Virus record (IMG/VR): IMGVR_UViG_3300017991_005548
Location: 124,001 to 188,000 of that record
Strand: one strand, 5' to 3'
DNA length: 64,000 nt
Positions 2,967 to 50,626 of this stretch are shown here, one piece after another. Each line of letters begins with the position of its first letter. Position 1 is the stretch's first letter. Under the pieces are notes generated by a model. It saw nothing but the letters and a program-made list of their open reading frames with translations. It was not told the origin of the DNA and did no database searches. A program made the position numbers and the translations under genes.

Positions 2967-2998
2967 ATAAATTTCTCCACAAGAAATGATATACTATA

Positions 2999-3026
2999 AT
3001 TATAGCCAGCAATCCGCCGACTACAA
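2999..3026 (-). promoter_or_regulatory. Possible sigma70-type promoter for the phosphoesterase gene
   Basis: Minus strand reads TTGTAG-N16-TATAAT just upstream of the RBS/ATG at 2966. Confidence 0.4.
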
Positions 3027-3674
3027 GCAAAAATACGAAAATTCAACAAAACCCATTTCCTCAGGTACATTTTCATATCTAACAACAAACCCATTTTCGA
3101 GCAATTCATAGACATAAAGTCTTGGAAAATCGAATGGGCCTGGATACTCGTTTGAAGTTGTGCTACTGTCACTACTTAAAGATTGGCTTGAACTACTGGA
3201 TGAGTCTTTTGAGCTAGAACTGGACGTACTGTCTGAACTAGGAGTATCTTCGCTACTGGTGCTGGAAGAATCTAATGAGCTTGAACTAGAGGAATACTCT
3301 TGTGAGCTTGAACTAGGAGATCCTAAGCTACTTGAAGAAGATTCGCTTGCCTCTGTTGAGCTACTACTGCTTGATGAGTCTTTTGAGCTTGAAGAACTGG
3401 ATTCAGTAGAAAGTGAAATTGAAGTAAGACTGGATTCAGAAGTTGGGCTTGATGAGCTTGATGAAGATATTCCCCCTATTGATAAACTTGATTCACTAGA
3501 AGAACTATATTCAATAGCTGGATTATAAATAGGTATAGAGGCCCATGTGATAATGGCACTCGTTATAGGATAACCAGTTATGATAGTAATATATCCATCT
3601 CCTGAACCAGCGTAAGCCTTCTTTCCTGTCAGGGGATAGTTATCAGATCTTCTTAAATCGTATCGTCTTATCAT
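3021..3674 (-). CDS. Small putative virion protein: beta-rich domain interrupted by a ~120-aa Ser-rich tract
   Basis: ATGA overlap with the upstream giant gene. Beta-strand-like N- and C-terminal parts (YITIITGYPITSAIITW / LYVYELLENGFVVRY..FSYFC) flank a poly-Ser tract. Confidence 0.75.
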   Translation of the reverse strand: MIRRYDLRRSDNYPLTGKKAYAGSGDGYITIITGYPITSAIITWASIPIYNPAIEYSSSSESSLSIGGISSSSSSSPTSESSLTSISLSTESSSSSSKDSSSSSSSTEASESSSSSLGSPSSSSQEYSSSSSSLDSSSTSSEDTPSSDSTSSSSSKDSSSSSSQSLSSDSSTTSNEYPGPFDFPRLYVYELLENGFVVRYENVPEEMGFVEFSYFCL

Positions 3675-6600
3675 TCTGGTAGCCTTTTGCTTATTGGAAC
3701 GTTTATAATAGTTCCATCACTTGACCTCGGAATCCTTTTGGAAATATTATACATTACTCCAATATGATGGATAACTGCGACCTCATCAGTGAAATTTGTT
3801 ACTCTTGTTGCGACTCTGAATGATGACGCAAAGAACAAATCCATAAATATAGTTGTCGATGGGTCCTGTGGAGCCAAGAATGTAATCGTCCCTTCAATAT
3901 TATTGGCCGCGTATTCTGAAGAATCAATCAAAGTCCCTTGAGTCTCATCCAGTCCAAGTCTATAAACATTCAGTGTAAAGTTTGCATTCCATCGACCATT
4001 AACAGCCGTATAAGTTTTGAAATCTTCTGTTTGTAATAATTCATTAAACCTTGTGGGCAATATCGTATGTTGATCTGGAATGATGTTATAGTACTCTTCT
4101 GGTCTCAAGGATTCACTTTGAGTCATAAGGTATTCTACAGTAGAGTTCTCTGGGACATCTGCTTCGCTAGTTATATGAATTGAAGAAATGTATTCGTCAT
4201 CGTCCAAGTTCACTGAGATTGGTTTGAAGAAAATAACGAATTCTCTTGGGTTGTAATAATCAACTTCTACTCCACCGTTAATTACTGGGGTTTGGAAATC
4301 AGAGTTTCCAACGAGTTTGATCTCATATTGAATATATTTCTGCAAAGCATCAATTGACTTGTCATGTTCATAAGGAATTGAATAGTCAATGAAGTCAGTC
4401 CAGTCAGAATATGTAATCCCATCTACACTAGTTCTTATTCTGTAGGTTACTTCTGCTCCTGTAGGAACGGTAACTCCCGCTATTACAGTAGTGTCTGGGA
4501 TATTGGGATTCTCAAAGACAATCGTCCCAGTAAGAGTTGTTGTGTTAATTTGTAAATTATTCCCTGATGCGATCTCATTACAAATACTATTTATTTGGGC
4601 TGAAGTGCTGTTATCTAAGTAGAATACAGACGATCCTCCCTCCTCTCCATATTTCTCAAGCAAGATAGAGTCAGATGCATGGGGTTGCCCTAATTGAATC
4701 GGAATTATCTGAACTTCACCCTCTCCATCAACAAAGTTGACAGTTTGTACAGCTTGATTTAAAGAATTCTCGGATGTATTCTCGTCGCCATCTGTGACAA
4801 TGATTACAAATTTCTTATAGTCTTTGTAATCTTCGTTATTTGTTTGATATTGGACCAATTGCTCTGCGGCTCTTTTTACTGCATCATGCAATTGACTTGC
4901 ACCAAAGAAACCAAATGAATCGATTGCAGAGGCCAAGTAGATATCATCACTTGTTAACTCTGGGACTCTATGTCTAATGGATGGATACCATTGTTGAATA
5001 CTGGCCACATTGATGATGAATTGTCTTTCGGAAAGATAACCATCAGACGTTGCAGAAACTCTGGCCTTAATATGCATGTAATCTCTTTTTACTCCTGCTC
5101 CCATTACCAAGAATCCAGGATCAGTTCCTTCTTCGTCTTCTGGTGGTTTGTATGGAAGTAGTTCAACAGTAATACGAGATCCATCAGTTACAATCTCTTC
5201 TGGTACGACAATTACATTCCCGATATCGTCAACGTACTGATACTCAGGGAACTTCGCATAAACACGAATATCAAAACCTCTTTCAGTTTCTTCGATATCG
5301 GTAGCAGTATAGAATGTTGCGGACGTATCTTCACTTCCAGCAGGGCCAGCAACTCCTGATTGAGATGAAGCTTCTTCTTCGTCCTCATAATCTAATATAA
5401 AGATTGGTTCACCATTATTAAGGTCGTTCCCCAATTCTATCTTAGTAGCAAGTCGTCTTGCCAATTCAGTTCCAGCAGGCACTTCGAGCGTAGCAAACAT
5501 CATTCTGTTGCCTTCTGGATTCACAGGTTCATTTTCATATGGTTGCGAATTTGTGGGATCGTATCTAACTGTTCCATTTACAACAAAGTCTGTATCAATA
5601 TTCTTTGTTGGAAGAATGTTCGTCATGGCAACACATCTGACATTATGAGAGTGACTTAACTGCTCATCTGATTCATAGCTGGTAAACGTATGAGTATGAT
5701 TGCCAATTGAGCCGAACAAATTAATCGTACTTGTCGTAGTGCCATTCCCATTGATATCTAAGCTAATTACATGAGTGTGACTGCTTACTACTTCACCTCC
5801 GCTATCTTCGTCATATACGTCTGAACGAATTAAACCAGACTGAACAGAATAGTCAGACAAAGAAATGTCTTGGTTGGGACCGACAATCAAACAACCATCA
5901 ATCAGGTTTCTTGTATCCTTCATCTGAGGTAACTGTCCACCAGAAGCATTACTCTCTTCGCAAATTCCACTTTCAAATGTCACTTTTGGCAATGGATACT
6001 CTATTACTGACTCAAAATCGGTTCCCTCATTAATTGTGAGTTGATTGAGAATTGGTTGGCCTTTCCAAGTCAATTCAGCATAGATTCTTGCAGTAGTAAC
6101 TCCATCTCTGACAAAATTAGTCTCATATTTTAGCTCAATACCAAGGGGTTCCACATATTGTTGTAGTGGTTTTGGAATTCTAATGCCACCACCAGGAGTG
6201 GGGAGTGGCCTTCCATTGGCGATTTCTCCTCTTCTGTATCCCCCTTCTTCCTTTCTGTAAGAGGTATATGCTTCAACCTGACTTAACCAAGGCTCTCTAA
6301 AGATCTCACGTTCTCCAAGAGGTTGCTGATGTCCAATATTTTTGTTTTTAGGAATGGCTGTTAACTCAAGCCTATCTGTTTGCCAAGTGGACCTTCTAGG
6401 GTTTGAATTGAATGTTGTTAAAGTTCTTGGTAAATCATTCGGTTGTCCCAAACCTCTAAGCCTTTTTACACCATCCTCTCCAACGAAAATGTCAGTTGGG
6501 TTGAAGTCATCTTGTAAATCCACTACAATTTTTGCGTTTGGATTACTTTCTCCATCAGCGTAGATAGGTGTCAGAGCGTCTTTTGCATAAAAAATGAATG

Positions 6601-9600
6601 AATCATCCTCATCTCCAAAGTTCTGACCAGTCAAGCTAACGATCCTTCTAACTTTTCTTACATATCCAGATGGATGGAAAACTTCAATATCTACATTAAC
6701 ATCCACAATTGGAGGGCAAAGTTCTGCCGCCGCCGCACCCGCTTCCCTTGGTTCAACTGGCTCTATTGGCCCAATGAATACCCCTCCAGCCCAACCATTA
6801 TCAGTAACACTTGAGCTTGGCTCAACATTAAATTGTTTGGCTGATCTAAAAGAGAAGTTTACTTGGACGTTATCTTCAACAACTTCACTAGCGTCAAGAT
6901 ATTCCACGCCAGTCCCTATCTCATAAACTTCATTTTCAGCAGGGACCAAAACGCCTGGATTTACAGAAGTTATAGTAACTGGATTCGCTATGAAGAACAT
7001 ATCTGCTAATATTTGCTCATGTTGATCTCTGTCCCCAAACGATACAGAAGCTTCGATAAATAACAAGGAAACAATATCACTCGTTGGTATTGTTATAGAG
7101 GCTTTGCCATTAACTATTTCTAAAGAGAATTGATACTGCTCAAACTGTTTGGCATATGTCCATTCTGCTGGATCTTGATAGAAAAGTCCGCTTTCTTCCT
7201 CAGTATCTTGTTGAACAGATCCACCAACAAGTTCAATGTATTGATTAATGATGTCATTTGCGTTAGTAGATCTGAGTCCAGTTCCAGAACTTGCACTTGG
7301 TGCGCTATCCGTCTCATTAACAGATTCAAGAACTTCTTCGAACGGATTGTTTTGAACTATTTCTCTCCATTGATCGATAGCTGTTTTGGGTGTTTCCACA
7401 GGCTCCCCATTTTCATCAACAGCCACATTTTCCAATGGTCTTATATTAGCAAATTGTTGAGTTGTTGGATATGAAGAATCTTTATAAACAACATTTGATG
7501 CTGTTGCATCCAAATCAATCACTCTATTTGTATACAGAGTTATATTAATGAATTGATCGTTAGCTAAAACAAACTCATCAGCCACAATATAATTAAGAGT
7601 AATTGTACTGCCATCAGAAGCATGATATCCTCTAACATACCTTTTCTCATATCGTGGAAAACAATCTAAGCTATCTTCATCTTTTGGAGCGGCTAGATAA
7701 TATTGGACCCGATCTGATTCAACATAAGTACTGTCAATAACAATAGGGGAAATAAAAGAAACTTCAAATGGATCTAGATACAATCTAGCAAGAGTCCTCC
7801 CAGTTTCACCCATAAAATCGGCATATGCGAAAATCTCATAATCTTTCGAGAAGAATAAAGGATTTTCTATGCCAGGGATATTCAGCCCTTCAAAAGTTTT
7901 CTCCTCATATTCAGTGGCAAAACTCTGCATAGATGACGTAGCCAAACCATTAGAGGTATATATTGGAGTTTCGATTACATAATCGACATCTTCTTCTGTG
8001 GCATCAGTTTCTTCAGCAGTTGGTAATTCTGTGGCCGTTTCTTGATCCCCATCATTTTGCTCTAATTGAGCTACAATATCCGTTTCAGGAGAGTATCTGA
8101 GTAATCGACTTAAATCTTCTTCTTTGTCTTTTACTGTTTCCAATATATCTTCAACAATAGGAAGTACCCTTGCACAAACGTTACCATCAACAGTTGGCAT
8201 ATCAAGAGTTTGCCTCTGAGTAAATTTTTCTGCAAGATTCAAATCTTCATAAGGAGTTGATGGTGGAACTCTGTCGATATCATATGGTTTTAATAATGAT
8301 GGATCAACATCTTTGTCATTAACAATTGGAGTCACATCAACGCTAAGTATCTCTGTCGCAAGAATATTATCTGTTGGAGTTAACTTCTCATCTGACGATT
8401 CGTTAAGTCTTATGGTTGTTCCCAATTCAGCAGAAACATCAAACAAAAGTGGATCGACAATATCAATGTATGGCCCAAGATTTGGATCAGTTCCAATCTC
8501 ATCAATTTTGGTTGTTTGGATGTTACCTGATTTATCTAGAATATCAATAATACTTTCTCTGAAATACCCCTCAGTAGATTGTACATAAATTCTTTTTTGG
8601 CCAGCAAACGATGGGTATGTTACAAAGGCTGATTCTATTTTGTCTTTTGCAAAAATGTCTGGCTCTTTATCAACTAACAAATTGACTTCTGTTCCGTCAG
8701 GGAACGGAGTTCCATCTTTCTCAAAGAAACTCATTGGAAGAAGGGCTGTCTGCCCAAAGAAGAAGATGTTATAACTCACCCATTCACTAAATGCTTCGAA
8801 ATCCCACTCTAAATAGTAACCATCTGAATTCTGCAAATAAAAGACGACATCTCTTGAGACCTTAGTATCTCTAACAAGGATGTTTGCGGTTGATCCGTTA
8901 ATGTTTGTTATTTTGTTATAAGAACTGTCTTGAACAATACTGCCAGCTAAACTATTATTTGTGACAGCGAGGCGCACACCAGGATCGAAGGTTATTGTAT
9001 TACTATCAATCTCTGTGATTGTATGGCCAATATTAGCGGCATCCCCTTGTAAGATATCTATTACATCTCCAACTTCAAAATCAGAAGCGTCTTCAACTGT
9101 TACAGTTGTGTCTCCAACATACAAAATGCTAGTAATATTGCTTTGCGTTATTCCTGCATTTGTTAGTAGCTTTCTGGAGATAAGATTTGTAGATGCAACG
9201 ATATCTATGGACTCTTCATTATTTGGGGCATTATTCCCAAGAGTAATTGAAGGAGATTCACTGCCAGGATAAAATAACTGCCAATTAGTAAGATTTACAT
9301 CACTAATAACATTGAAGTCAACTTTGAAATCTCCAATATTGTATGTATGGTTATTTTCAAGAGTCTTAAATCCATAAGCAATCATGGGATCTTCAACAGA
9401 AACAGCAGTAACTGATGAGAAATCTATTGTCGCATCACCAGTTCCAGAAACCAGATTCAAAGTCCCACTATCAATTGGACTAGTGTTACCATATGTAATT
9501 AAAGAAATCTGATCACTTTTTAGCTTATGTTGAACCGTAAACTCAGCACCATTATTCTCATAAACAGCGTCAACATCAGCCTGAGAACCCGAAACATCAA

Positions 9601-11587
9601 AGATGTAAGTTGTTCTACTTGGGTTATTCAGGTCTAGGTTAATCGTTGCGAATGTCCCAAGTCCTGCTGTAATAGTGGATACATCAACATCAGAACCCCC
9701 GAAGGTGAACATATCAAACTTTATGTCAGACGGATAGTAGGTTTTAAATCTATTTACTAAGCACTCAACGATGTTTTGTCGGTTGTTGTATCTGTCCATC
9801 ATCCCCATACTTCCAGAACTATCTACAACAAATGAGAGTATTGCATCAGAGTACTCAATTTCACCATCAACAATGTCATCTTCAATGGTTATCGGGTCTG
9901 TGGCAGGAGGTGTTGTTATAGTACTGTTTCCTGGATCGAAAGGGTCAAAGTTACCAACAACTCTTAAAGCAAAAACGGAATTGTAAAGGTCTTCCCAAGT
10001 AGTCTCATCTTTACTTGTCCATGCAAAAGTGTCTGAATCAGCATTTTTCTCATCATATGCCCATAATACAAAATTATCTTCATCTCCATTGTGGCGCAAT
10101 GTGATGGAAAGATATCCATTACTAGGAGTTGTTTCATCCATTAAATCGAAATCGAACGCATACCAATCGTCTTTAACAATTGTTGAGGCATGAAGTGAGG
10201 CCAAATGGAGTTCGCTTTTAGGAGTCCCATCATCATAACAGTCAGATATGGACATCCTTATCCAATAATTTGATGTTCCTCTTGCCCTGTACAAGAATAC
10301 ATAAACCTTACCAATACTGTATTCCGAATCATAGACTTTGAATGTTTGTGCAAGTCTATTTCTTATGTTTGGGTTGGCCGCAGAAGACAAACCTAATAGC
10401 AATGGTTTTGTTTGGTTCCAAAAGAGACCCGAACTAGAAGAGCTTGAGGAAACATTTGCTTCACTTTCACTACTGGTACTGGAAGAATCAATACTTGAAC
10501 TACTAGAGGTTGAATTACTTGTTGGACTGGATGAAGAAGAGTTTGACTGTGAACTTTCCGATTGAGAACTATGCCCAAGGCTTGAAGAAGATGAGCTTGA
10601 ATCAAGAGAACTTGAACTAGAAGAGCTACTTGTTGTAACTGTGCTGGATGAGTAACCACCCGAATCAGAAGAGCTTGAATCAAGAGAACTTGAACTACTG
10701 CTAGAACTTGAGCTAAATTGGTTACAAGATAGGGCTAAGGTATTCGGAAATGGCAATAGGGTTCCATCCCAGTCAACTGTACCAGATAATCCACTATTGT
10801 TTTGTTCAATAAGAGTTATTGTTCCTGCGCCAGTCCTTTGACCGACAGCTATTAAGTTGATTAAGCCAACCTCCCTATAAACTCTGACCTGTTGAATTGC
10901 TCCTTGGACAAACAAACCAACATACATATTGCAATTGGTAGTGTTTCCATCTCCCATCCCTGAAAAAGTCCAGTTTGTGAAGTAAGCACAATTGCCCCCT
11001 TCGCAGAATGGACTTGTACAACATTGGGAGCTACTTGAGCTTGGAGATTGAGTCGATTGACTGCTTGTACTTGAAGAATCAATAGAGCTAGACGAACTAG
11101 AGGTGCTTCTGTCGATACAATATATTATGCCTGAATAAGAGAAGTCAAGTGGAGTCCCATCCCAATTTACTTGTCCAGTTATCCCGCTATTATCTCTTTC
11201 TTCAAGATCTATATCTGAGGCTACCAATGAAGTAACTTGCCCCAAAGCTATGATATTAAAATATGTTGGGTCTTGGTATAGTTCAACCTGCTGAGTGTTA
11301 GTTGCTGGGAAGAACACCGTTCTTACATAAATAATTTCATAATCAAGACTTACCCCAATAAGATTCCACCCAGTTAGATGAGCACAAGCAGTTCCTTCGC
11401 ATTCTGGGTATTGACAGTATCCCGAACTACTAGAGCTTGAGGAAGAGTCTATACTCGAAGATGAGCTACTAGAAGTAGAAGAAGAATCTATACTCGAAGA
11501 TGAGCTACTAGAAGTAGAAGAAGAATCTATGCTCGAACTCGAACTTGAACTTTCGCTATATTGAAAACTTGAACTTGAACTTGACAT
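3671..11587 (-). CDS. Giant (2638 aa) tail appendage/adhesin-like structural protein with Ser-rich N-terminus, two Cys modules, a split vWA (MIDAS) domain and an HxH triad
   Basis: vWA motifs FVVDSSGSM (~aa 588) and GASQLHDAV...VIIVTDGDEN (~aa 2230-2270). Duplicated C..P.CEG..CA..T.W...QQV..Y...IA.GQ...NSG..G.V.WDG module. HTH/HTH/HSH triad. Lies within the tail-gene block. Confidence 0.8.
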   Translation of the reverse strand: MSSSSSSFQYSESSSSSSSIDSSSTSSSSSSSIDSSSTSSSSSSSIDSSSSSSSSGYCQYPECEGTACAHLTGWNLIGVSLDYEIIYVRTVFFPATNTQQVELYQDPTYFNIIALGQVTSLVASDIDLEERDNSGITGQVNWDGTPLDFSYSGIIYCIDRSTSSSSSSIDSSSTSSQSTQSPSSSSSQCCTSPFCEGGNCAYFTNWTFSGMGDGNTTNCNMYVGLFVQGAIQQVRVYREVGLINLIAVGQRTGAGTITLIEQNNSGLSGTVDWDGTLLPFPNTLALSCNQFSSSSSSSSSSLDSSSSDSGGYSSSTVTTSSSSSSSSLDSSSSSSSLGHSSQSESSQSNSSSSSPTSNSTSSSSSIDSSSTSSESEANVSSSSSSSGLFWNQTKPLLLGLSSAANPNIRNRLAQTFKVYDSEYSIGKVYVFLYRARGTSNYWIRMSISDCYDDGTPKSELHLASLHASTIVKDDWYAFDFDLMDETTPSNGYLSITLRHNGDEDNFVLWAYDEKNADSDTFAWTSKDETTWEDLYNSVFALRVVGNFDPFDPGNSTITTPPATDPITIEDDIVDGEIEYSDAILSFVVDSSGSMGMMDRYNNRQNIVECLVNRFKTYYPSDIKFDMFTFGGSDVDVSTITAGLGTFATINLDLNNPSRTTYIFDVSGSQADVDAVYENNGAEFTVQHKLKSDQISLITYGNTSPIDSGTLNLVSGTGDATIDFSSVTAVSVEDPMIAYGFKTLENNHTYNIGDFKVDFNVISDVNLTNWQLFYPGSESPSITLGNNAPNNEESIDIVASTNLISRKLLTNAGITQSNITSILYVGDTTVTVEDASDFEVGDVIDILQGDAANIGHTITEIDSNTITFDPGVRLAVTNNSLAGSIVQDSSYNKITNINGSTANILVRDTKVSRDVVFYLQNSDGYYLEWDFEAFSEWVSYNIFFFGQTALLPMSFFEKDGTPFPDGTEVNLLVDKEPDIFAKDKIESAFVTYPSFAGQKRIYVQSTEGYFRESIIDILDKSGNIQTTKIDEIGTDPNLGPYIDIVDPLLFDVSAELGTTIRLNESSDEKLTPTDNILATEILSVDVTPIVNDKDVDPSLLKPYDIDRVPPSTPYEDLNLAEKFTQRQTLDMPTVDGNVCARVLPIVEDILETVKDKEEDLSRLLRYSPETDIVAQLEQNDGDQETATELPTAEETDATEEDVDYVIETPIYTSNGLATSSMQSFATEYEEKTFEGLNIPGIENPLFFSKDYEIFAYADFMGETGRTLARLYLDPFEVSFISPIVIDSTYVESDRVQYYLAAPKDEDSLDCFPRYEKRYVRGYHASDGSTITLNYIVADEFVLANDQFINITLYTNRVIDLDATASNVVYKDSSYPTTQQFANIRPLENVAVDENGEPVETPKTAIDQWREIVQNNPFEEVLESVNETDSAPSASSGTGLRSTNANDIINQYIELVGGSVQQDTEEESGLFYQDPAEWTYAKQFEQYQFSLEIVNGKASITIPTSDIVSLLFIEASVSFGDRDQHEQILADMFFIANPVTITSVNPGVLVPAENEVYEIGTGVEYLDASEVVEDNVQVNFSFRSAKQFNVEPSSSVTDNGWAGGVFIGPIEPVEPREAGAAAAELCPPIVDVNVDIEVFHPSGYVRKVRRIVSLTGQNFGDEDDSFIFYAKDALTPIYADGESNPNAKIVVDLQDDFNPTDIFVGEDGVKRLRGLGQPNDLPRTLTTFNSNPRRSTWQTDRLELTAIPKNKNIGHQQPLGEREIFREPWLSQVEAYTSYRKEEGGYRRGEIANGRPLPTPGGGIRIPKPLQQYVEPLGIELKYETNFVRDGVTTARIYAELTWKGQPILNQLTINEGTDFESVIEYPLPKVTFESGICEESNASGGQLPQMKDTRNLIDGCLIVGPNQDISLSDYSVQSGLIRSDVYDEDSGGEVVSSHTHVISLDINGNGTTTSTINLFGSIGNHTHTFTSYESDEQLSHSHNVRCVAMTNILPTKNIDTDFVVNGTVRYDPTNSQPYENEPVNPEGNRMMFATLEVPAGTELARRLATKIELGNDLNNGEPIFILDYEDEEEASSQSGVAGPAGSEDTSATFYTATDIEETERGFDIRVYAKFPEYQYVDDIGNVIVVPEEIVTDGSRITVELLPYKPPEDEEGTDPGFLVMGAGVKRDYMHIKARVSATSDGYLSERQFIINVASIQQWYPSIRHRVPELTSDDIYLASAIDSFGFFGASQLHDAVKRAAEQLVQYQTNNEDYKDYKKFVIIVTDGDENTSENSLNQAVQTVNFVDGEGEVQIIPIQLGQPHASDSILLEKYGEEGGSSVFYLDNSTSAQINSICNEIASGNNLQINTTTLTGTIVFENPNIPDTTVIAGVTVPTGAEVTYRIRTSVDGITYSDWTDFIDYSIPYEHDKSIDALQKYIQYEIKLVGNSDFQTPVINGGVEVDYYNPREFVIFFKPISVNLDDDEYISSIHITSEADVPENSTVEYLMTQSESLRPEEYYNIIPDQHTILPTRFNELLQTEDFKTYTAVNGRWNANFTLNVYRLGLDETQGTLIDSSEYAANNIEGTITFLAPQDPSTTIFMDLFFASSFRVATRVTNFTDEVAVIHHIGVMYNISKRIPRSSDGTIINVPISKRLPE
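11448..11525. repeat. Perfect 39-bp tandem duplication (codes SSTSSSSSSSIDS-type unit)
   Basis: tctatactcgaagatgagctactagaagtagaagaagaa occurs at 11448-11486 and 11487-11525. Confidence 0.9.
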
Positions 11588-11589
11588 CT

Positions 11590-14500
11590 TTAATTAACTT
11601 CTGGCTGAATCAGAGGTAAAATCTCTGAACTTCCTTTCTTTGTAGAGAAGATTTCTCCACCTGTTGTACCTGCTACTGTTTGTCCTGACGCAGATTCAAC
11701 TCTTACTATACCATTGACTTCTAAGTTGCCTTCAACGAAGTCATTTAGGTCAGCTATATTCTCCCAGGTATTCCCATCATCCTCACTATTATAAATGAAA
11801 CTGCTTGAACCCACGACCAGAATATTATTTTGGTCTTTTTTCATATCGGAAACGACATCGATTAATGCAGTGTTTCTGTGAGTATGTTGAGAAGGCAACC
11901 CTCTAATCAGATAATCTTCCACCTGGATTGTTTCAACTTGATTGTTGCGTACCATGTGCTCATGTGTATTCGAAAATTCGTCTCTCAAAACCTTTACCTG
12001 AACAGTATTCGCAACAAAATAAGCGTTACTTGCAACGATCTCTAGTTTTATGGTTGTCGAGTCGATTACTGATTTGATAAAATTGGTTTCTGATTTATTC
12101 GCAGAAGATATGATAGTAATCTTATCTCCATTAACCATATTAGTTGTATCCTCAACCTTAATCGTTGAGTCTCCCAACTCAATATCTTCTGTGACAACAT
12201 GTGTACTTGTTACAAAGTCATCATAATATATATTCTTTGTATAGCCATAATTAGTGGCGTTGATTTCCCAACTCCAAGTCTCAGAAATTTTGATATTGTT
12301 GTATTCGGTGAAGTCCCAATTAGTATTGTTGAGTAACTTAACGGTCATTGTTGTCGCTGTATGCTGAACTACCTCACTAAAATATTCAACTCCAATTTCC
12401 AATGGGTTCCAGAATCGAATTCTTGCATCTTTGAAAAGAGTTCCATCTTTTTGAACCAATGCATTGTTAAACAAGCTTGTATCAGAGACTTCAAACTTAA
12501 CAGTGGCATTTAGAACCTGTTCAAAAGAAGCTATCGATCCACTAACAAATCCACCAACCAAATCCAAATCATGATAATGGGATGAATCCGTAGAAGTAAT
12601 TTTGTTATTGAAAGAAGATAATGGTTGGTAAATCGGACCAGTTAATCTAAATACATCGTCAGACCCTATAATCAACCCCACAGGAGTTGTTATTATTTCA
12701 GTATTAATTAAGCTAGAGAAGTCATTTAGTATGATCTTATTCCTAGAATTCTGATAAACTGTCATGCCTTCTATCAACGCGGCATCACTATCACCATTGG
12801 TAACTTGGAAATCAAAATCAACCAAGAAATTATCAACAACATTTTGGGTAAAAACTACGTCAAGGTTAACTTTTCCACTACTGTCAATCCCTACGAATGA
12901 TTGCCCAGGTATGATATCTTCATTAGTAGAATCTGGAGTCTCAGCATTGTAGGGGGTGATAGTTCCGTCAATGATTATCTGATTTGACGTATTAGAAACA
13001 ACTGTGTACTCTTTGCCAAGATTTCCATTTTGATCAGTTGATACGTAAATTTTTCCGTTAGCCAATTGATTGTTTTGCGTGAGGAAGTCAAAATCAACAT
13101 CAAGAACTGACCTATCTCCAACAAATTTTATTCTCTTGCCAACATACGTTAACCAAATAGCTACGAATTCAGTTTCCAGTTCTACAGTTATTTCTCCACC
13201 AATTGTCCTAGAAGAGTTTTCCGCGATAGTGTACCCAGCTACAATAGGCAAGTCTACAACATAAAGTGTTCTTCCTTTGTATTGATTTGCTGAAATAGTA
13301 TCTGACGCTTCAATTGACAGAACTACCGCATTATTAACAGGGTTGACAGAAATCGATTTTATTAAGCCAGATACATCGATATTAGTTACCTGTCCTGGGA
13401 ATCCAACAGACCAAATCTGACCATCATAAGGGAACTCACCTGTTGTAGTTTGACTATCTTCGTAAACTCCGATATCTGTACCAAATAATATATTTCCATT
13501 GTCAGCTTCTACCATATCGTTTACAACAACTGGGTAAACTTCAAATGCCAAATTACCACTCTGGCTTTGGATAGTTTCATTAGCCTCTCTGCCAAGAACT
13601 ACAATAGATGAATCAAATCCTGAGTTGAAAATCACCCTACCACTGAAGATAGGAGTGTCGTTCCCTTCGGCAAAAATGGAGATGTTGCGTTTGTCCAATT
13701 CTCCGTCTGCATATCTAAAGTCATTTGGATATGTATAGGATACTGACATAATGGTATGTCCAAAGGTTGAAACTTTGGATGACTGAATTGTTCCCCTAAC
13801 TTCTTCAAACTTCCTATACGTACTCCATACCTTACCCAAGTCGGAACTTCTAAGAATATAGTGAATCACATTACTCAGGTCCGTTCCTGCGGCACTAGCG
13901 AGAATCCCACCAGTTGATATCGGCAAAAAGTTTACGATGTTTACGTTTTCAACTGTAGCATCAAACAATCCAGAGGTCCATACAAAATCACCAAGGTATG
14001 GGGTGTAAGCAATTTTATTCTTCCCTCCAACTAGCAAAGTATTGGTCAGGTCAACGTTACCAAGGTTTTCCTCTCCATCAAACTGTTGCCACCAAGACCC
14101 CATAGTTAATCTAACACTTGCGATTGTTTCTGGATCTTCTTCAAAAGGAGGAGAAACCTGGATAGAGTTTGGAGTAGCTTTTACAATAACATAACTTGTG
14201 TTATTTTTAGGGTTCGATGGATCACTTATAGTTTCTATCTTAACTGCTCTATTTGGTACTAACTCTGAGTAAATTCCCCCAGCCGCTTTGATAATACCAA
14301 CTGTTGGATCTCCCTCAATATTTTTAAATGAAGCTTCATGAGGTGGAATAACAACAAAACTATCTTCAGGCCATCTTAAGGACATAGAGAGTGCAGGGAA
14401 TCTGACGGCTTCCTGATCTTGAAGCGTCCATGTGATCATATCCTGAGTCAAATAAACCCCGTTATCAGTTGCAACTAACAGATTCTCATCCCCAAAGACA

Positions 14501-17500
14501 CTCATATCATAAACAGGTCTTTTCAACCCCCAAACATAGAACCAGTTCGCGTTTACATTGTCGTTTCTTCGCGCCCAGAAAACTCCGATATCAGTTCCAA
14601 CAATAATATTACCAGAGAATGTACCTGTTCCAATAAGGATCTTGTTGATTGACGTTGCTCCCTTAGCTTCAAATGGGCTTTGGAAGTTAACTAAACTGTA
14701 TGCTTCGCTATTCTCAATGTCTATGTAATTCCCATAATAGTTTTCATCCGCAGGATTTTCAGAATAATGGAAGTCATAGAAAAGGCTCTGAATCATCTCA
14801 GAATCGATTTCGGGGTAGACATACCTTACAGCTTGAGTCAACTGTAAAAGGTTGCTCAGATAGGCGTTATTTAGCTCATATGGCCTTTGATCGCTTTCAT
14901 ACGACAGCCGATCTTCTATTTCTTCATGAGTGTTGGTGCCAATGTTGGTTAAGAAACTATCATATATGTTCAATCGGATAGCCGAACTTGCATCTAAATT
15001 AGGCAATTTATAAACAGTGGCAGGAGTATCTATTTTTATTGTTGATCTCGGAGAGAATGAAATTATGTTATCTGAAACAGATGTGATTGTTCTATAAAGA
15101 TAAGATGTCTCAACTTCTCTCTCTTCAACCGATCTTTGAGCTTCAGCTTCTGCGGCTTGTTCCGCACTTGCGCCACTTTCTCCTCCAGCCACAACAGTTT
15201 CTGTTGGTGGAGGAAGCTCATCTTTCCGAATCGAAATGCGATCTCCAGCCTGAAACTGACTTGCGTCCTCAACTTCAATGAAATTATCATAAACAGATAA
15301 ACCGTTGGTCAAACTTGATGTTCCACTGAAGTCTACCAATCCTAATGTCGGATCAACTGTGAAACTCCATCCTCTAGATGCTCTATTATCGATATCTGTT
15401 TTGGTTGAGTAAATAAGTTTACTGTTAATATAGATATCATATGGCACATCTGTTGGCCATCCTCCACTCTCGGCATACCACTTATCGAAATTAACGAGAG
15501 TTGTAATAGTTTGATCAGTTACAGTAATCTCTTTTAAATAGAATGTTTTGCTTCTATTCCCATAAGCGTAATCGAAATATACATTTTCTCCGTTAAGAGT
15601 TAGTGATGGCAGTGGAGATCCAGAAAAACTAAACTTACTTGTAAACGATGAAGAATATTCATAGACTTCATTAACTGAGCCAACAAAGAATGATTCTAAA
15701 TCATATGACACTTGGAAAGAATATGCAACAATATCACTAATTTTATTCCACCCCCCAGAGTATCTATAAATGCCGTCTGGTTTAGAAAGATACATAATAC
15801 CATCATATGCAAAGAACTTGCCATTCTCACCTTCTTCTGGAAGATTGCAAATAAAATTCCATGTCTCTCCACTATCTTTTGATCTATAAACCTTTGTATT
15901 TGATACGGCATAGAGAGTTATGACTAAGCTATGGGTATGGCCATTGGCACTTTGAACAGTCCAATCGGTTACGTCATGAGTATGCCCATCTTCCAATTCA
16001 AGAGTTCCATTCCCATTAATGTTAACATCAAGAGTATGAGTGTGACCAAGCTTAGTTGTAACTTTCATAGACTTAAAATCTTGTTCAATCTGGTTGTAGT
16101 TACCTTCGAGTTTCTCAACCCAGGTCTTTCCTTGGTCTTCTGTTTTGAAAATTCCATCAGAGGCACAATATACGTTATTACTTGTGAAAACCAGTATGTC
16201 ATTAATGTTGGGAGATTCTCCTGGCCTTGTTGTATTAGAAAGTATTGTACTTCTATTGTGAGATCTGAGAACCAGAACTCCATTATTTGAAGCAACCCAA
16301 ACACTTCCTTCTTCATCTTGTTCTGCATTTTTGAACACCCCTACATTTGATGGAGTATTTGGGGCTTCCCAACTAAGATAGAAGTTATCTTGTAAGTTGA
16401 CATTTGTTGCAACGATATCTTTTCCCACAGTCAAGATTTTATCTGTTGTAACACCATTTCTTGTAATTTCTTGAACCTCGATTGATATCGCTGGGATACC
16501 ATCAAGATATCTCTCGACCTTGGCGACTGTTTTAACTGAGCCTGGATTCTCAGCAATCCTTTCTTGAACTTCTTCACTTTCTGGATCTAACAACTCATTT
16601 GTCTCTACGTCTCTAAGTTGAACCGCTATTAATGTCTCGTCATCTCCAACTTCATCAAAATCTTTAAGGTCAGTTATTTTGTAGTTTGGAACTGGAATAT
16701 ATGAAAGTTTTTGAATCATTGTTTGATCGGCATCACTATTTGATTCAGATTTCCCTACAATAAGATATGAATCTCCAGTTTCTGTAAGAGTTTCTTCCGC
16801 TAAAGCAATTTGCAGTGTGTAGATATCACTTGTAATCTTCAACGGAGTGCCAGTTTCTATCTCATAATTTTGCTTTGCTTTTTCGAACATTTCTAATAGA
16901 TCTGTTCCTGTCTCATAAAAAGGCAGATCGTTAATAACAAAAACAAACGCATCATCATTTGGGATCATGATTAAATCATCGGATGTTCCAACATATAGAT
17001 TACCGAATCGATCTTCAAACATAGAGTATGCAACTTTAACATCTCCAATAACTGATTGAATGATTTCATGAGTGTGAGAAGAATCCGTTTCAGTAGTTTC
17101 GTTTATGTCATTCTGCCAATCAAGCAATCCCTGACTCTCTGCATCCTCAACAACCCCATCTTGTACTGAGTGCAAATGGGCAACCAAATACGTTTCGTCA
17201 TCCTGCCCTACAGCATAGTATACAGGCTCGTCGTTGATGTATGTTTGTTCAGTAAGACCTGTATTCTCTTCATTTACCAATAAATTATGGTAATGGTCTA
17301 ATGTATTTTCTGTTACTGATGGTGTTACCAAGAAATTTATACCATCATTACTGATTACGGGATAGTTAAATGGTGAGAATGGTTCGTCTGTTCTTCCAAC
17401 ATGAGACAAGAATGGGATCTGAGAAATCTCAAATACTCCAGATGCGATTTTCTGAGCATTGACAAAAAAGATATTCTCATTCCTGATAACTCCTGTTACC

Positions 17501-19131
17501 TCTGAATTCCCAAGGATTTCAATCGTAACATGATCTGCCTCTAATCCTACCGTCTTTTGATAGTCGAGTAAAGTAACTTCAATATTTCTTGCCGCGTCAG
17601 GAGTGAAAACAAACGTGTCGTCTTTATCTCTTAACAATGCCTCGGCAGTTACACTTTGACTTTTCAAATCTGCAAATCCAGCAATGGACTGAGTTTCTTC
17701 ATCAAAGAATACAAATGGATTCGTGTTAATATCAACGCTTGCAAAAGAAGCATTGAATTCTGTTATCATGTTTAACATGAATCTATAAACACTACTTTGC
17801 TGTTCAGAATATTGGAATCTTGTTCCCTCATATTCAAAGTCAACACCATAAGTTTTGGTTATCCCTCCAATTATTCCTGTAAGAGAAATCGTCTTGGTTG
17901 TTGGGTCGGCAGTAATATCGTCAGATGTCTCGTCACCAACTGGGATGTTGTTTACATAAACTATGTATTGGCTTGATTCATCCCATACAAAATTTGAGAT
18001 ATCTGGGAGAACGTGAGTGTGGTCTTCAACAGTCCCAGTTGTAAACTCCTGAGTTTGCATTTCGTTCTCAACTATCTTATGATAGTGATTGTCAGCCGTT
18101 CCAACAATACCAACTGTTTGACCGTTACCATCAGTATCTATTGTAAATGTATGTCGATGTCCTTCGACAGTATCTGTTAGCTGACTTTCTGTTATGCTGA
18201 AATTTCCTCTTCTGCTTTCTGGGTTATAAGAGGTAAGAACTGCGTTTCTGAAATCTGTTTCAAGATTGATTCTTGCAGGATCGTATGATGCAGACCCACC
18301 ATGGTGATGGGCGGCAACAATTTGATTTGCATAACTGGTGATTGTAGATTCAAGATTCTTCAAAGTATTAACATCAGAAGTGTCAATAGAAACAACCTCA
18401 TTTCCTCTTGTTGTTACCAAACCTAAGAGTACTTTAGCTGGGGCCGCAGAAAAGTTTGGTGCTGAGTTAAAAGTAACTTCAGTAAAATGATTCGCAGAGT
18501 CATCTCTAAACTGATATGAGTATATCGCATCCATTTGAGTGTCGTAAGCTTCTTTTGCAACAATATAGTCATTAAAATCGTTGTAATCATTGACTGACGG
18601 TTCGGGGATCAAATATGGAGGGTAATCAGCCAAAGGCGGATAGAAATTAGAATATTTTCTAGTAACCCAAATATAAGTATCTGCATTGTTGTTTAAAGTT
18701 ATGACTTCTGGTATGACAACTTTTACGTAGGCATTTTCAATTGGTTTTGTTGGATTGAATGTTGGGTCATATTCTTGAACGACTGCGATATAGGCATCTG
18801 CTTCTGCATCAGTCATATCTTCTTCTGGGGCTTCTTGAAGTTTTACGACTTCAACTTCTCGATCTCCGCTAACCATACTTGATCTTTGTTTGACTGTATA
18901 TGGGCTTTCAGCGAAGTATCCATTAATAATTCCTCTACCTGGAAGTATTTGAACTGTTGTATCTGTTAGATGTTCTATTTCCCATCCTTCAATGACACCA
19001 ACACCAACGACTCCAACATATGACTCCATATTGTAGTCAACTGTGACGAATCTCTGGTATTCTGACTGAGCAGAATATGCTCCCCCTCTTGGGAAGTATT
19101 CTAATTTGAATCTTGGTGCAATTTTAGGCAT
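11590..19131 (-). CDS. Giant (2513 aa) tail fibre/appendage protein with Asp-box (BNR) beta-propellers and multiple HxH clusters; paralog of 39010-43377
   Basis: Asp-box-like motifs FKTEDQGKTW, YRSKDSGETW, YLTQDMITW, LRSSDLGKVW and YNSEDDGNTW. At least 12 HxH motifs. Its N-terminus aligns with that of the 1455-aa protein. Confidence 0.8.
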   Translation of the reverse strand: MPKIAPRFKLEYFPRGGAYSAQSEYQRFVTVDYNMESYVGVVGVGVIEGWEIEHLTDTTVQILPGRGIINGYFAESPYTVKQRSSMVSGDREVEVVKLQEAPEEDMTDAEADAYIAVVQEYDPTFNPTKPIENAYVKVVIPEVITLNNNADTYIWVTRKYSNFYPPLADYPPYLIPEPSVNDYNDFNDYIVAKEAYDTQMDAIYSYQFRDDSANHFTEVTFNSAPNFSAAPAKVLLGLVTTRGNEVVSIDTSDVNTLKNLESTITSYANQIVAAHHHGGSASYDPARINLETDFRNAVLTSYNPESRRGNFSITESQLTDTVEGHRHTFTIDTDGNGQTVGIVGTADNHYHKIVENEMQTQEFTTGTVEDHTHVLPDISNFVWDESSQYIVYVNNIPVGDETSDDITADPTTKTISLTGIIGGITKTYGVDFEYEGTRFQYSEQQSSVYRFMLNMITEFNASFASVDINTNPFVFFDEETQSIAGFADLKSQSVTAEALLRDKDDTFVFTPDAARNIEVTLLDYQKTVGLEADHVTIEILGNSEVTGVIRNENIFFVNAQKIASGVFEISQIPFLSHVGRTDEPFSPFNYPVISNDGINFLVTPSVTENTLDHYHNLLVNEENTGLTEQTYINDEPVYYAVGQDDETYLVAHLHSVQDGVVEDAESQGLLDWQNDINETTETDSSHTHEIIQSVIGDVKVAYSMFEDRFGNLYVGTSDDLIMIPNDDAFVFVINDLPFYETGTDLLEMFEKAKQNYEIETGTPLKITSDIYTLQIALAEETLTETGDSYLIVGKSESNSDADQTMIQKLSYIPVPNYKITDLKDFDEVGDDETLIAVQLRDVETNELLDPESEEVQERIAENPGSVKTVAKVERYLDGIPAISIEVQEITRNGVTTDKILTVGKDIVATNVNLQDNFYLSWEAPNTPSNVGVFKNAEQDEEGSVWVASNNGVLVLRSHNRSTILSNTTRPGESPNINDILVFTSNNVYCASDGIFKTEDQGKTWVEKLEGNYNQIEQDFKSMKVTTKLGHTHTLDVNINGNGTLELEDGHTHDVTDWTVQSANGHTHSLVITLYAVSNTKVYRSKDSGETWNFICNLPEEGENGKFFAYDGIMYLSKPDGIYRYSGGWNKISDIVAYSFQVSYDLESFFVGSVNEVYEYSSSFTSKFSFSGSPLPSLTLNGENVYFDYAYGNRSKTFYLKEITVTDQTITTLVNFDKWYAESGGWPTDVPYDIYINSKLIYSTKTDIDNRASRGWSFTVDPTLGLVDFSGTSSLTNGLSVYDNFIEVEDASQFQAGDRISIRKDELPPPTETVVAGGESGASAEQAAEAEAQRSVEEREVETSYLYRTITSVSDNIISFSPRSTIKIDTPATVYKLPNLDASSAIRLNIYDSFLTNIGTNTHEEIEDRLSYESDQRPYELNNAYLSNLLQLTQAVRYVYPEIDSEMIQSLFYDFHYSENPADENYYGNYIDIENSEAYSLVNFQSPFEAKGATSINKILIGTGTFSGNIIVGTDIGVFWARRNDNVNANWFYVWGLKRPVYDMSVFGDENLLVATDNGVYLTQDMITWTLQDQEAVRFPALSMSLRWPEDSFVVIPPHEASFKNIEGDPTVGIIKAAGGIYSELVPNRAVKIETISDPSNPKNNTSYVIVKATPNSIQVSPPFEEDPETIASVRLTMGSWWQQFDGEENLGNVDLTNTLLVGGKNKIAYTPYLGDFVWTSGLFDATVENVNIVNFLPISTGGILASAAGTDLSNVIHYILRSSDLGKVWSTYRKFEEVRGTIQSSKVSTFGHTIMSVSYTYPNDFRYADGELDKRNISIFAEGNDTPIFSGRVIFNSGFDSSIVVLGREANETIQSQSGNLAFEVYPVVVNDMVEADNGNILFGTDIGVYEDSQTTTGEFPYDGQIWSVGFPGQVTNIDVSGLIKSISVNPVNNAVVLSIEASDTISANQYKGRTLYVVDLPIVAGYTIAENSSRTIGGEITVELETEFVAIWLTYVGKRIKFVGDRSVLDVDFDFLTQNNQLANGKIYVSTDQNGNLGKEYTVVSNTSNQIIIDGTITPYNAETPDSTNEDIIPGQSFVGIDSSGKVNLDVVFTQNVVDNFLVDFDFQVTNGDSDAALIEGMTVYQNSRNKIILNDFSSLINTEIITTPVGLIIGSDDVFRLTGPIYQPLSSFNNKITSTDSSHYHDLDLVGGFVSGSIASFEQVLNATVKFEVSDTSLFNNALVQKDGTLFKDARIRFWNPLEIGVEYFSEVVQHTATTMTVKLLNNTNWDFTEYNNIKISETWSWEINATNYGYTKNIYYDDFVTSTHVVTEDIELGDSTIKVEDTTNMVNGDKITIISSANKSETNFIKSVIDSTTIKLEIVASNAYFVANTVQVKVLRDEFSNTHEHMVRNNQVETIQVEDYLIRGLPSQHTHRNTALIDVVSDMKKDQNNILVVGSSSFIYNSEDDGNTWENIADLNDFVEGNLEVNGIVRVESASGQTVAGTTGGEIFSTKKGSSEILPLIQPEVN

Positions 19132-50571: not shown

Positions 50572-50604
50572 GACATTTGTTCTGTGTTATTGGTTGGTAA
50601 AAGT

Positions 50605-50612
50605 ATTATACA
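50605..50612 (-). promoter_or_regulatory. TGTATAAT -10-like element upstream of the tail-tip block
   Basis: Intergenic octamer shared with 29385-29392 and 59330-59337. Confidence 0.45.
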
Positions 50613-50626
50613 TTCGAACAGAAGGA

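What the first reader, a model, noticed from the sequence alone, without database searches (positions are those of the whole stretch)
4560..9845. vWA/MIDAS domain split by a ~1570-residue insertion
The first half (ILSFVVDSSGSMG = DxSxS, helix, IKFDMFTFG; ~9700-9845) and the second half (GASQLHDAVKRA, KKFVIIVTDGDENTS, IIPIQLG, LLEKYGEEGGSSVF; ~4560-4910) are about 4.7 kb apart in one ORF, with MIDAS ligands apparently retained. Pilus adhesins have arms inserted in vWA domains, but an insert of this size with several domains and an HxH triad would be extreme. It implies a giant looped-out appendage.
Basis: partly seen in the sequence, partly recalled or inferred. Interest (0 to 1): 0.72.

Follow-up and report, generated by a model that had tools for sequence, protein, structure and literature searches.

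The report
Phage vWA domain split by giant insert
A 2,638-residue tail-module protein of an uncultivated huge marine-sediment phage has a metal-binding vWA adhesion domain cut in two by a conserved multi-domain insert of about 1,560 residues, and in a sister lineage the same gene is split into two genes that each keep one half.

Summary
ORF 3671-11587 (-) encodes 2,638 aa. Residues 576-636 are the first beta-alpha-beta unit of a vWA domain, with DxSxS. Residues 2199-2344 are the rest of the domain, with GAS, TDG and four more helix/strand units. The two pieces match complementary, adjoining parts of the Pfam VWA profile, of solved vWA chains and of an alignment of unsplit vWA domains.

The C-half model matches more than 40 solved vWA domains that lack exactly their first 45-60 residues (Z up to 12.5). 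The two halves co-fold in silico (ipSAE 0.84; best control 0.00). All MIDAS ligands are invariant or nearly so in 72 homologues down to about 20% identity. Neither half has a second half next to it.

About 70 cluster representatives keep a gap of 1,405-1,843 aa. A sister family has a gap of 1,976-2,241 aa, with Laminin-G and Kelch modules in the insert. One subclade has the gene split by TAA-ATG into two ORFs, one half each.

The insert holds tailspike-like beta-barrels, macroglobulin/Ig-like sandwiches and an invariant 3xHxH module. The gene closes a tail module that begins with a tape-measure gene.

The best reading is a tail adhesin whose vWA fold clasps a giant loop. Cis versus trans assembly and metal binding are untested.

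The parts
3671..11587 (-). Whole ORF, 2,638 aa (P0001): giant tail-module protein with a split vWA domain
   Evidence: The identical protein lies on an ENA contig of about 524 kb. The DNA is held by three sediment or seawater runs.
10448..11587 (-). aa 1-380: Ser-rich linkers and two copies of a Cys-flanked domain of about 100 aa (aa ~63-160 and ~195-290). This is the least conserved part of the family.
   Evidence: The internal repeat is 38% identical, E 5e-17. A 39-bp tandem repeat lies at 11427-11537. Pfam finds nothing here.
9863..10447 (-). aa 381-575: conserved domain of unknown fold in front of the vWA N-half
   Evidence: It is conserved in the family. Pfam gives no match. It was not modelled.
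9680..9862 (-). aa 576-636: vWA N-half. It comprises strand beta1 (582-589), the DxSxS loop (D589, S591, S593), helix alpha1 and strand beta2 (622-629).
   Evidence: It matches Pfam VWA positions 3-49 and columns 19-70 of the unsplit vWA alignment. D589, S591 and G592 are invariant and S593 at least 90% conserved in 72 sequences.
4994..9679 (-). aa 637-2198: the insert, about 1,560 residues, mostly beta, with many domains. It leaves the vWA fold at the beta2/beta3 turn.
   Evidence: The AF2 models have mean pLDDT 85.3 and 84.7. The gap between the halves is 1,405-1,843 aa in about 70 homologues. Foldseek finds arrays of macroglobulin/Ig-like sandwiches.
8912..9154 (-). aa 812-892: small beta-barrel of the kind inserted in phage tailspikes
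   Evidence: VIA-align gives Z 10.2 to LKA1 gp49 and Z 7.0 to the Solidus tailspike. A sequence-similar module occurs in the neighbouring ORF.
8387..8647 (-). aa 981-1067: second small beta-barrel of the same kind
   Evidence: Z 11.9 (rmsd 1.4) to the phage Mystique tail tube domain, Z 11.6 to the K1 lyase tailspike, Z 8.7 to Phi92 gp150 and Z 6.6 to the lambda tail tip.
5645..5779 (-). aa 1937-1981: triple HxH module (H1937/1939, H1964/1966, H1979/1981, with a DxxGNG turn)
   Evidence: Four His are invariant and two at least 90% conserved in 72 sequences. pLDDT is 91-95. The same module occurs at least twice in the neighbouring ORF.
4556..4993 (-). aa 2199-2344: vWA C-half. It comprises the beta3 region, the GAS(Q) loop (S2231 in the place of the MIDAS Thr), beta4 with T-D2266-G-D-E-N, and beta5, beta6 and their helices.
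   Evidence: It matches Pfam VWA positions 65-167 at 25.1 bits and columns 66-179 of the unsplit vWA alignment, E 3e-23. VIA gives Z up to 12.5 to more than 40 solved vWA domains. G2229, D2235 and D2266 are invariant; S2231 and E2269 are at least 90% conserved.
3674..4555 (-). aa 2345-2638: conserved C-terminal region, shared with the sister family
   Evidence: BLASTP aligns P0001 2199-2637 with P0130 2466-2908, 26% identity, E 2e-21. Pfam gives no match. The Atlas look-alikes are viral hypothetical proteins only.
11590..19131 (-). Upstream neighbour, 2,513 aa. It has propeller repeats, at least two triple-HxH modules and barrel modules like those of the insert.
50627..56860 (-). Tape-measure protein, 2,077 aa. 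It marks the start of the tail module that P0001 closes.
   Evidence: phrog_167, E 6e-18

Best explanation
P0001 is a tail-associated giant adhesin or fibre-like protein of an uncultivated huge phage from marine sediment. Its vWA (integrin I-like) domain is assembled from two segments of the chain about 1,560 residues apart. Residues 576-636 give strand beta1, the DxSxS loop, helix alpha1 and strand beta2. Residues 2199-2344 give beta3 to beta6, their helices, and the Ser and Asp ligands that complete the MIDAS metal site. The chain leaves the fold at the beta2/beta3 turn. By the known topology of vWA domains that turn lies on the MIDAS face, where integrin beta subunits carry their specificity-determining loop and pilus adhesins their arms (inference from textbook topology). 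The chain then runs through a string of tailspike-type beta-barrels, macroglobulin/Ig-like sandwiches and a six-histidine (3xHxH) module, and returns. The vWA fold therefore acts as a clasp that closes a giant loop. Its metal site most likely binds a carboxylate ligand, either on the host surface or on a partner tail protein, with the inserted array around it giving reach and specificity. Shown here: the split, its conservation, the complementarity of the halves, their predicted co-folding, and the tail-module context. Inferred: metal binding, the ligand, assembly in cis, and presence in the virion.
For: The motifs and the ORF are confirmed. The two halves match complementary parts of the Pfam profile. 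Profile searches place the N-half on the first 50 or so residues of solved vWA domains, and the C-half on the following part of the same chains: ITIH1 276-332 then 369-450, and PTMP1 255-305 then 320-375. hhalign maps the halves to adjoining columns of an unsplit vWA alignment. In the AF2 model, aa 2202-2344 match ITIH1 335-476, the CD11b I domain 178-301, TEM8 87-215 and LapA vWFA 58-194, with Z of 9-12.5. The N-half is predicted as a beta-alpha-beta unit. The co-fold scores ipSAE 0.84 against 0.00 for the best of 3 controls; that mark was reached by 58 of 80 solved complexes and 2 of 110 mismatched pairs. The MIDAS residues are invariant or at least 90% conserved in 72 sequences. The split is kept in about 70 representatives and in a sister family with a larger, partly different insert. 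The gene is split naturally into an ORF with the N-half and an ORF with the C-half. For the tail context, the tape measure lies at 50627-56860, the neighbours carry Laminin_G_3, FG-GAP, LRR and Ig-like domains, and the insert barrels resemble tailspike and tail-tip domains.
Against: No model of the whole chain or of a joined construct could be made, so closure in cis is not shown. The co-fold score may reflect the model's memory of the very common vWA fold: it shows that the halves are complementary parts of such a fold, not that they bind (caveat stated). The N-half evidence by sequence alone is modest: Pfam E 0.02-0.03, hhalign probability 65%. Its DSSGSMGWNDRFNNR stretch also resembles the blade motif of NHL/'Pizza' propellers, at about 4 bits per blade. 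The MIDAS Thr is Ser here. No virion proteomics exist, and PHROGs does not match the protein. The phage is uncultivated and its host is unknown.
Confidence: 0.8

Rival explanations
1. The halves assemble in trans. The N-half of one chain completes the C-half of another chain (3D domain swapping). This would give head-to-tail dimers, trimers or rings of the giant protein rather than a closed loop within one chain.
For: In the sister lineage the two halves sit on two separate polypeptides, so complementation between chains must work there if the fold forms at all. HxH motifs are known from trimeric phage fibres (PMC11705849). The co-fold test used two separate chains and cannot tell cis from trans.
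Against: Covalent linkage favours closure within the chain on entropic grounds. The three HxH motifs lie within 45 residues of one chain and could form a six-His site without partners (inference). Nothing here shows oligomers.
Confidence: 0.15
2. The vWA is a relic. The C-half is a truncated, non-functional remnant, and the N-half motif is an unrelated stretch, for example an NHL-like blade motif, that happens to carry DxSxS.
For: The N-half profile's best-scoring PDB hits by summed score are designed NHL 'Pizza' propellers. A scan of the full-length protein against Pfam gives only a sub-threshold VWA_2 match.
Against: The Pizza match is a 19-residue motif at about 4 bits per blade, and it scores only because it is summed over six blades. 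The same search also finds the N-terminal part of real vWA domains (LapA vWFA, PilB, ITIH1, integrin alpha-M). A helix follows DxSxS, as in vWA, not the strands of a blade. All five MIDAS positions on both halves are invariant or nearly so over sequences only about 20% identical, which a relic would not keep. The halves are predicted to pack on each other, and the controls are not.
Confidence: 0.04
3. The split is an assembly or gene-calling artefact: a chimeric contig, or two genes fused by an error.
For: None was found. It was considered because the sequence comes from a metagenome assembly.
Against: The ORF is continuous. The stretch is held by three runs from different samples. About 70 cluster representatives from JGI, ENA, Logan and NCBI share the architecture.
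Confidence: 0.01

Closest known systems
Pilus-tip vWA adhesins with inserted 'arms' (RrgA, GBS104, PilB of S. sanguinis, SpaC, PitA, Mfa5)
   Same: They have a vWA fold with a MIDAS site, extra structure inserted into loops on the MIDAS face, and an adhesive role at the tip of a filament (PMC8179133; PMC7893114). Several of them are structural matches of the C-half: Mfa5, PitA and SpaC, with Z 9.1-10.2.
   Different: Their arms are hairpins or small sheets. In one search the chain ranges of the matched solved chains exceed the aligned length by about 50-100 residues. Here a single insert of about 1,560 residues (up to about 2,240 in the sister family) holds many complete domains. There is no signal peptide and no sortase or pilin context, and the gene lies in a phage tail module.
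Integrin beta-subunit I-like domain with its specificity-determining loop (SDL)
   Same: An insertion projects from a vWA-type domain next to the MIDAS and shapes ligand specificity (PMC3255974). By my own knowledge the SDL sits in the beta2-beta3 (B-C) loop, the same site as here.
   Different: The SDL is a disulfide-bonded loop of about 30 residues. The integrin domain is itself the inserted partner, within the hybrid domain. No sequence relationship beyond the vWA superfamily was found.
ITIH / calcium-channel alpha2-delta type vWA domains
   Same: These are the closest solved vWA sequences and structures to the C-half, including the 'W-P' strand before the Thr/Ser loop: ITIH4 321-392 and alpha2delta-1 296-373, and ITIH1 at Z 12.5.
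   Different: Those domains are continuous, and the E-values are weak (0.01-0.05). This is superfamily-level likeness only.
HxH iron sites of phage fibres and spikes (T4 gp37, R-pyocin fibres, P2 spike apex)
   Same: Conserved HxH motifs occur in a phage tail protein (PMC11705849; titles).
   Different: In those proteins three chains each give one HxH to a site. Here three HxH lie within 45 residues of one chain, together with a DxxGNG turn. No sequence or fold match to gp37 was found, and metal binding is untested.

Membership tests
vWA domain superfamily (Pfam PF00092 / clan CL0128) | Sequence match to the family profile above the curated threshold | tested here: met
   The C-half alone scores 25.1 bits against a cut-off of 23.8, at profile positions 65-167. 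The N-half is sub-threshold (15.1 bits, positions 3-49). The full-length scan misses the domain because it is split. The own-genome scan gives 23.8 bits, at the cut-off.
vWA domain superfamily (Pfam PF00092 / clan CL0128) | Rossmann-like alpha/beta fold: a six-stranded sheet (order 3-2-1-4-5-6) flanked by helices | tested here: met
   This rests on prediction only. The C-half model matches more than 40 solved vWA domains, Z up to 12.5, rmsd about 2.5-3 A over 125-138 residues. The N-half is predicted as beta-alpha-beta. The halves are predicted to pack: beta1 and the DxSxS loop touch the beta4 TDG segment and the GAS loop. No experimental structure exists.
vWA domain superfamily (Pfam PF00092 / clan CL0128) | Domain formed by one continuous stretch of about 170-200 residues | tested here: not met
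   The halves are 1,405-1,843 aa apart in this family and 1,976-2,241 aa apart in the sister family. Ordinary vWA proteins in the same hit list have gaps of 4-36 aa.
MIDAS-bearing vWA/I domains | DxSxS, plus Thr, plus Asp as metal ligands | tested here: met
   D589-x-S591-x-S593; S2231 at the Thr position, a conservative change (aligned to the Thr of GGxT); and D2266 in TDG. D589, S591 and D2266 are invariant, and S593 and S2231 at least 90% conserved, in 72 sequences. The sister family keeps DxSGS and TD(N).
MIDAS-bearing vWA/I domains | Binding of a divalent cation and of a ligand carboxylate | not testable with these tools
   This needs protein: ITC or a crystal structure with Mg2+/Mn2+, and D589A or D2266A mutants.
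Sortase- or type IV-pilus tip adhesins with vWA arms (RrgA/PilB type) | Signal peptide plus an LPXTG sorting signal or pilin module; a bacterial pilus operon | tested here: not met
   The N-terminus is Ser-rich with no hydrophobic signal. There are no pilin or sortase-related Pfam matches. The gene lies in a phage tail module.
Phage tail fibre / receptor-binding proteins | Position at the distal end of the tail gene module, and domains shared with known tail fibres or spikes | tested here: inconclusive
   It is the last large ORF downstream of the tape measure. Two barrels match tailspike or tail-tip domains, Z 10-12. However, there is no PHROG match, no tblastn match to 50,697 phage records, and no virion data.
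Trimeric HxH iron-binding fibre tips (T4 gp37 type) | HxH motifs that form inter-chain octahedral Fe sites in a trimeric beta-structure | not tested
   Only the motifs and their conservation were seen. Oligomeric state and metal content were not examined.

The most novel reading that the evidence does not exclude
The vWA fold serves here as a natural split-protein clasp. Its first beta-alpha-beta unit and the rest of the domain are independent pieces that find each other and are perhaps locked by the MIDAS metal. In single-gene phages this closes a loop of 1,500-2,200 residues made of exchangeable host-binding modules. In the fissioned lineage it holds two separate giant tail proteins together. 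This would be a new assembly principle for phage fibres, and a naturally evolved fragment-complementation pair.
Probability: 0.35. Interest if true: 0.8.

Novelty: new variant of a known kind. Interest (0 to 1): 0.66.

Why it matters
Domain insertions are common, but an insert eight to twelve times the size of its host domain is far outside what is described for vWA domains. This one holds ten or more folded modules and is kept for a long evolutionary time. The arms and loops found in the papers read here and in the solved structures matched are tens to about a hundred residues. The finding shows that the beta2/beta3 turn next to the MIDAS site can carry almost any load. It offers a natural gene-fission experiment on whether a vWA fold can be rebuilt from two chains. 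It also gives huge-phage tail biology a recognisable, testable adhesion module in proteins that are otherwise annotated as hypothetical, or wrongly as 'Mg-chelatase ChlD' and 'YegL'. Standard domain scans miss or under-score the domain because it is split, so other such cases may be hidden.

Tried and rejected
- PHROGs found nothing for P0001 or for most neighbours.
- A tblastn search of aa 380-1400 against 50,697 phage records found nothing.
- Pfam found nothing in the insert, the N-terminal region or the C-terminal region.
- Pfam tail sheath and terminase models found nothing in the 296-kb virus record, so the tail type is unknown.
- Protein Atlas look-alikes were only viral hypothetical clusters. 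One search failed on a length limit.
- I considered reading the N-half as an NHL or 'Pizza' propeller blade and rejected it. The match is a 19-residue motif, a helix follows it, and real vWA N-termini are hit too.
It was replaced by HMM-anchored coordinates.
- Literature searches for a split, interrupted or discontinuous vWA domain found no such case. A huge-phage fold survey does not mention vWA.
A two-chain co-fold was used instead.
- Read laying was not used, because continuity of the ORF was not in doubt.
Full report
**The observation**

The region lies in one uninterrupted minus-strand ORF, window 3671-11587, which encodes 2,638 residues. VVDSSGSMG (DxSxS) is at aa 587-595. IKFDMFTFG is at 622-630. 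GASQL starts at 2229, VTDGDEN is at 2264-2270, and IIPIQLG is at 2294-2300. The three HxH motifs start at 1937, 1964 and 1979. From the end of the first piece (about aa 636) to the start of the second (about aa 2199) there are about 1,560 residues.

**Are the two pieces halves of one vWA domain?** Five independent lines say yes.

1. Pfam. Scanned alone, aa 585-636 match the VWA profile (PF00092) at positions 3-49. Aa 2219-2329 match positions 65-167, at 25.1 bits against a curated cut-off of 23.8. In the full-length scan the domain is almost invisible.
2. Solved structures, by sequence. Family profiles of each piece place the N-half on the first 50 or so residues of vWA domains, and the C-half on the following part of the same chains: ITIH1 276-332 then 369-450, and PTMP1 255-305 then 320-375.
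3. Unsplit vWA domains. I took ordinary vWA domains from the weak end of the homologue list and aligned them (A7). hhalign maps the N-half to columns 19-70 (E 5.8e-5) and the C-half to columns 66-179 (E 3e-23). The pieces abut at strand beta3.
4. Structure prediction.
   - An AlphaFold2 model of aa 1197-2344, built on a 72-sequence alignment, has mean pLDDT 84.7.
   - An exhaustive structural search aligns its last 143 residues to more than 40 solved vWA domains, with Z up to 12.5.
   - In every case the solved domain lacks exactly its first 45-60 residues in the alignment: CD11b I domain 178-301, TEM8 87-215, LapA vWFA 58-194.
   - The model of aa 576-1199 (pLDDT 85.3) shows the missing unit: strand 582-589, helices, strand 622-629.
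5. Co-folding.
   - Given as two separate chains, the halves are predicted to pack with about 250 contacts.
   - The ipSAE score is 0.84, against 0.00 for the best of three controls. That mark was reached by 58 of 80 solved complexes and 2 of 110 mismatched pairs.
   - Because the vWA fold is very common, this shows that the halves are complementary parts of such a fold. It does not show that they bind.

**MIDAS site**

In 72 homologues, down to about 20% identity, D589, S591, G592, G2229, D2235 and D2266 are invariant. S593, S2231 and E2269 are at least 90% conserved. S2231 aligns with the MIDAS Thr of ordinary vWA domains. All five ligand positions are therefore kept, with Thr replaced by Ser.

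**Where the insert sits**

The N-half ends just after strand beta2, and the C-half profile begins with the beta3 region. By textbook vWA topology the beta2/beta3 turn is on the MIDAS face. Integrin beta subunits carry their specificity-determining loop near the MIDAS (PMC3255974). My assignment of that loop to the beta2-beta3 turn comes from my own knowledge. Pilus adhesins carry short arms around the MIDAS (PMC8179133; PMC7893114).

**How widespread it is**

- A word-index search found 30 clusters.
- An exhaustive profile search found 91 representatives at E <= 1e-30.
- Local HMMs of each half show about 70 full-length giants with the halves 1,405-1,843 residues apart.
- A sister family of 2,900-3,260 residues has the halves 1,976-2,241 residues apart. 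It keeps DxSGS and TD(N).
- The sister family shares the vWA frame and the C-terminal region with P0001. It also shares a core of the insert, roughly P0001 1500-1830.
- The sister family lacks the HxH triad and carries Laminin_G_3 and Kelch modules instead.
- The insertion therefore predates both families, and its content has been remodelled since.
- Ordinary vWA proteins in the same hit list have a gap of 4-36 residues.

**Natural gene fission**

Eight representatives of about 1,000-1,050 residues (one of them shorter) carry only the C-half, and seven of them start with Met at the same conserved place inside the end of the insert.

In two loci with enough DNA, the adjacent upstream ORF carries only the N-half. 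These ORFs are L004:3446-9298 (1,950 aa) and L005:3478-9999 (2,173 aa), which score 51 and 50 bits against the N-half HMM. Each is separated from the C-half ORF by a TAA stop and 1-3 nt. The pair is collinear with the single-ORF protein P0130, at residues 276-2197 and 2207-3256. Two further contigs show a truncated upstream ORF that ends 3 to 31 nt before the start.

Partial sequences of the main family start at scattered places and look like contig-end fragments.

Gene order around the locus is shared with the window: an FG-GAP protein upstream, and a helicase and a D12 methyltransferase downstream.

**What the insert is made of**

- Two small beta-barrels (aa 812-892 and 981-1067) match barrels found in phage tailspikes, tail tubes and tail tips, with Z 10-12.
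- The second half of the insert resembles arrays of macroglobulin/Ig-like sandwiches: C3, TEP1 and alpha-2-macroglobulin, Foldseek E down to 1e-9 but with low TM-scores.
- The triple HxH module is modelled with high confidence and is invariant or nearly so.
- The same module, with its DxxGNG turn, recurs at least twice in the upstream 2,513-residue ORF.
- HxH motifs bind iron in trimeric phage fibres (PMC11705849). Here three motifs lie in one chain.

**Context**

- The window is part of a 296-kb IMG/VR virus record, and the same gene lies on an ENA contig of about 524 kb.
- The DNA is held by sediment and seawater metagenome runs.
- ORF 50627-56860 is a tape-measure protein.
- Downstream of it, all on the same strand, come about 45 kb of large ORFs with Laminin_G_3, LRR, FG-GAP, Ig-like and propeller repeats. 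P0001 is the last large one.
- Then come a metallophosphatase and replication-type genes.
- This is where tail fibres and receptor-binding proteins usually lie.

**Interpretation**

The structural claim is well supported: one vWA fold is rebuilt from two distant segments that bracket a giant, conserved, multi-domain insert. The functional reading is inferred from family knowledge and context. In that reading the protein is a tail adhesin, the MIDAS binds a carboxylate on the host or on a partner protein, and the vWA fold acts as a clasp.

The main open rival is assembly in trans (domain swapping). The fissioned lineage makes that physically plausible, and none of the tests here can exclude it.

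**Novelty**

The domain family is known, and inserted arms near the MIDAS are known. An insert of 1,500-2,200 residues in a domain of about 200 residues, together with a natural two-gene version, was not found in the literature searched. I class it as a new variant of a known kind.

Noticed in passing
window 11590-19131 (-), aa 325-373 and 1030-1067; also P0001 aa 1937-1981: A compact module of about 45 residues, HxH-x5-D-x-x-G-N-G ... HxH ... HxH, recurs in the two adjacent giant ORFs. Its six His are invariant or nearly so in the P0001 family. It has no Pfam match and may be a single-chain version of the trimeric HxH metal site of phage fibres.
   Followed up: partly
L004:3446-12364 and L005:3478-13147: In a sister lineage the split-vWA gene is cut by TAA-ATG into two ORFs, one with the N-half and one with the C-half. 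Seven cluster representatives start with Met at the same conserved position.
   Followed up: yes
window 10448-11587 (-), P0001 aa 1-380: The region has Ser-rich low-complexity linkers, including a 39-bp tandem repeat at 11427-11537. It also has two copies (38% identical) of a Cys-flanked domain of about 100 aa with no known family. It is the least conserved part of the protein.
   Followed up: partly
window 50001-56000: The tape-measure gene has higher G+C than the rest of the window (0.425 against about 0.38) and a strong negative AT skew (-0.19 to -0.25).
   Followed up: no
G000:C1:253503-253880 (locus L002): The same virus record encodes a second, ordinary, unsplit vWA protein: an open frame of 258 aa that matches Pfam VWA positions 2-126.
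   Followed up: no
window 3021-3674 (-) and 3671-11587 (-): The 217-aa ORF downstream of P0001 starts 4 nt before the end of P0001 (overlap 3671-3674), which suggests translational coupling. It has no family match.
   Followed up: no
whole record: IMG/VR lists the source as a 296-kb 'provirus', but the same gene lies on an ENA contig of about 524 kb. No sheath or terminase Pfam model matched the record. The true genome size, and whether it is integrated, remain unclear.
   Followed up: no
L005:13147-15736: In the fissioned lineage three glycosyltransferase genes directly follow the ORF with the C-half. They are absent at that place in the window.
   Followed up: no
window 855-2966 (-): A 703-aa protein has a calcineurin-like metallophosphatase domain and matches PHROG 'DNA transfer protein' and D5-like or HNH families in its N-terminal part. 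It lies at the border between the tail module and the replication genes.
   Followed up: no
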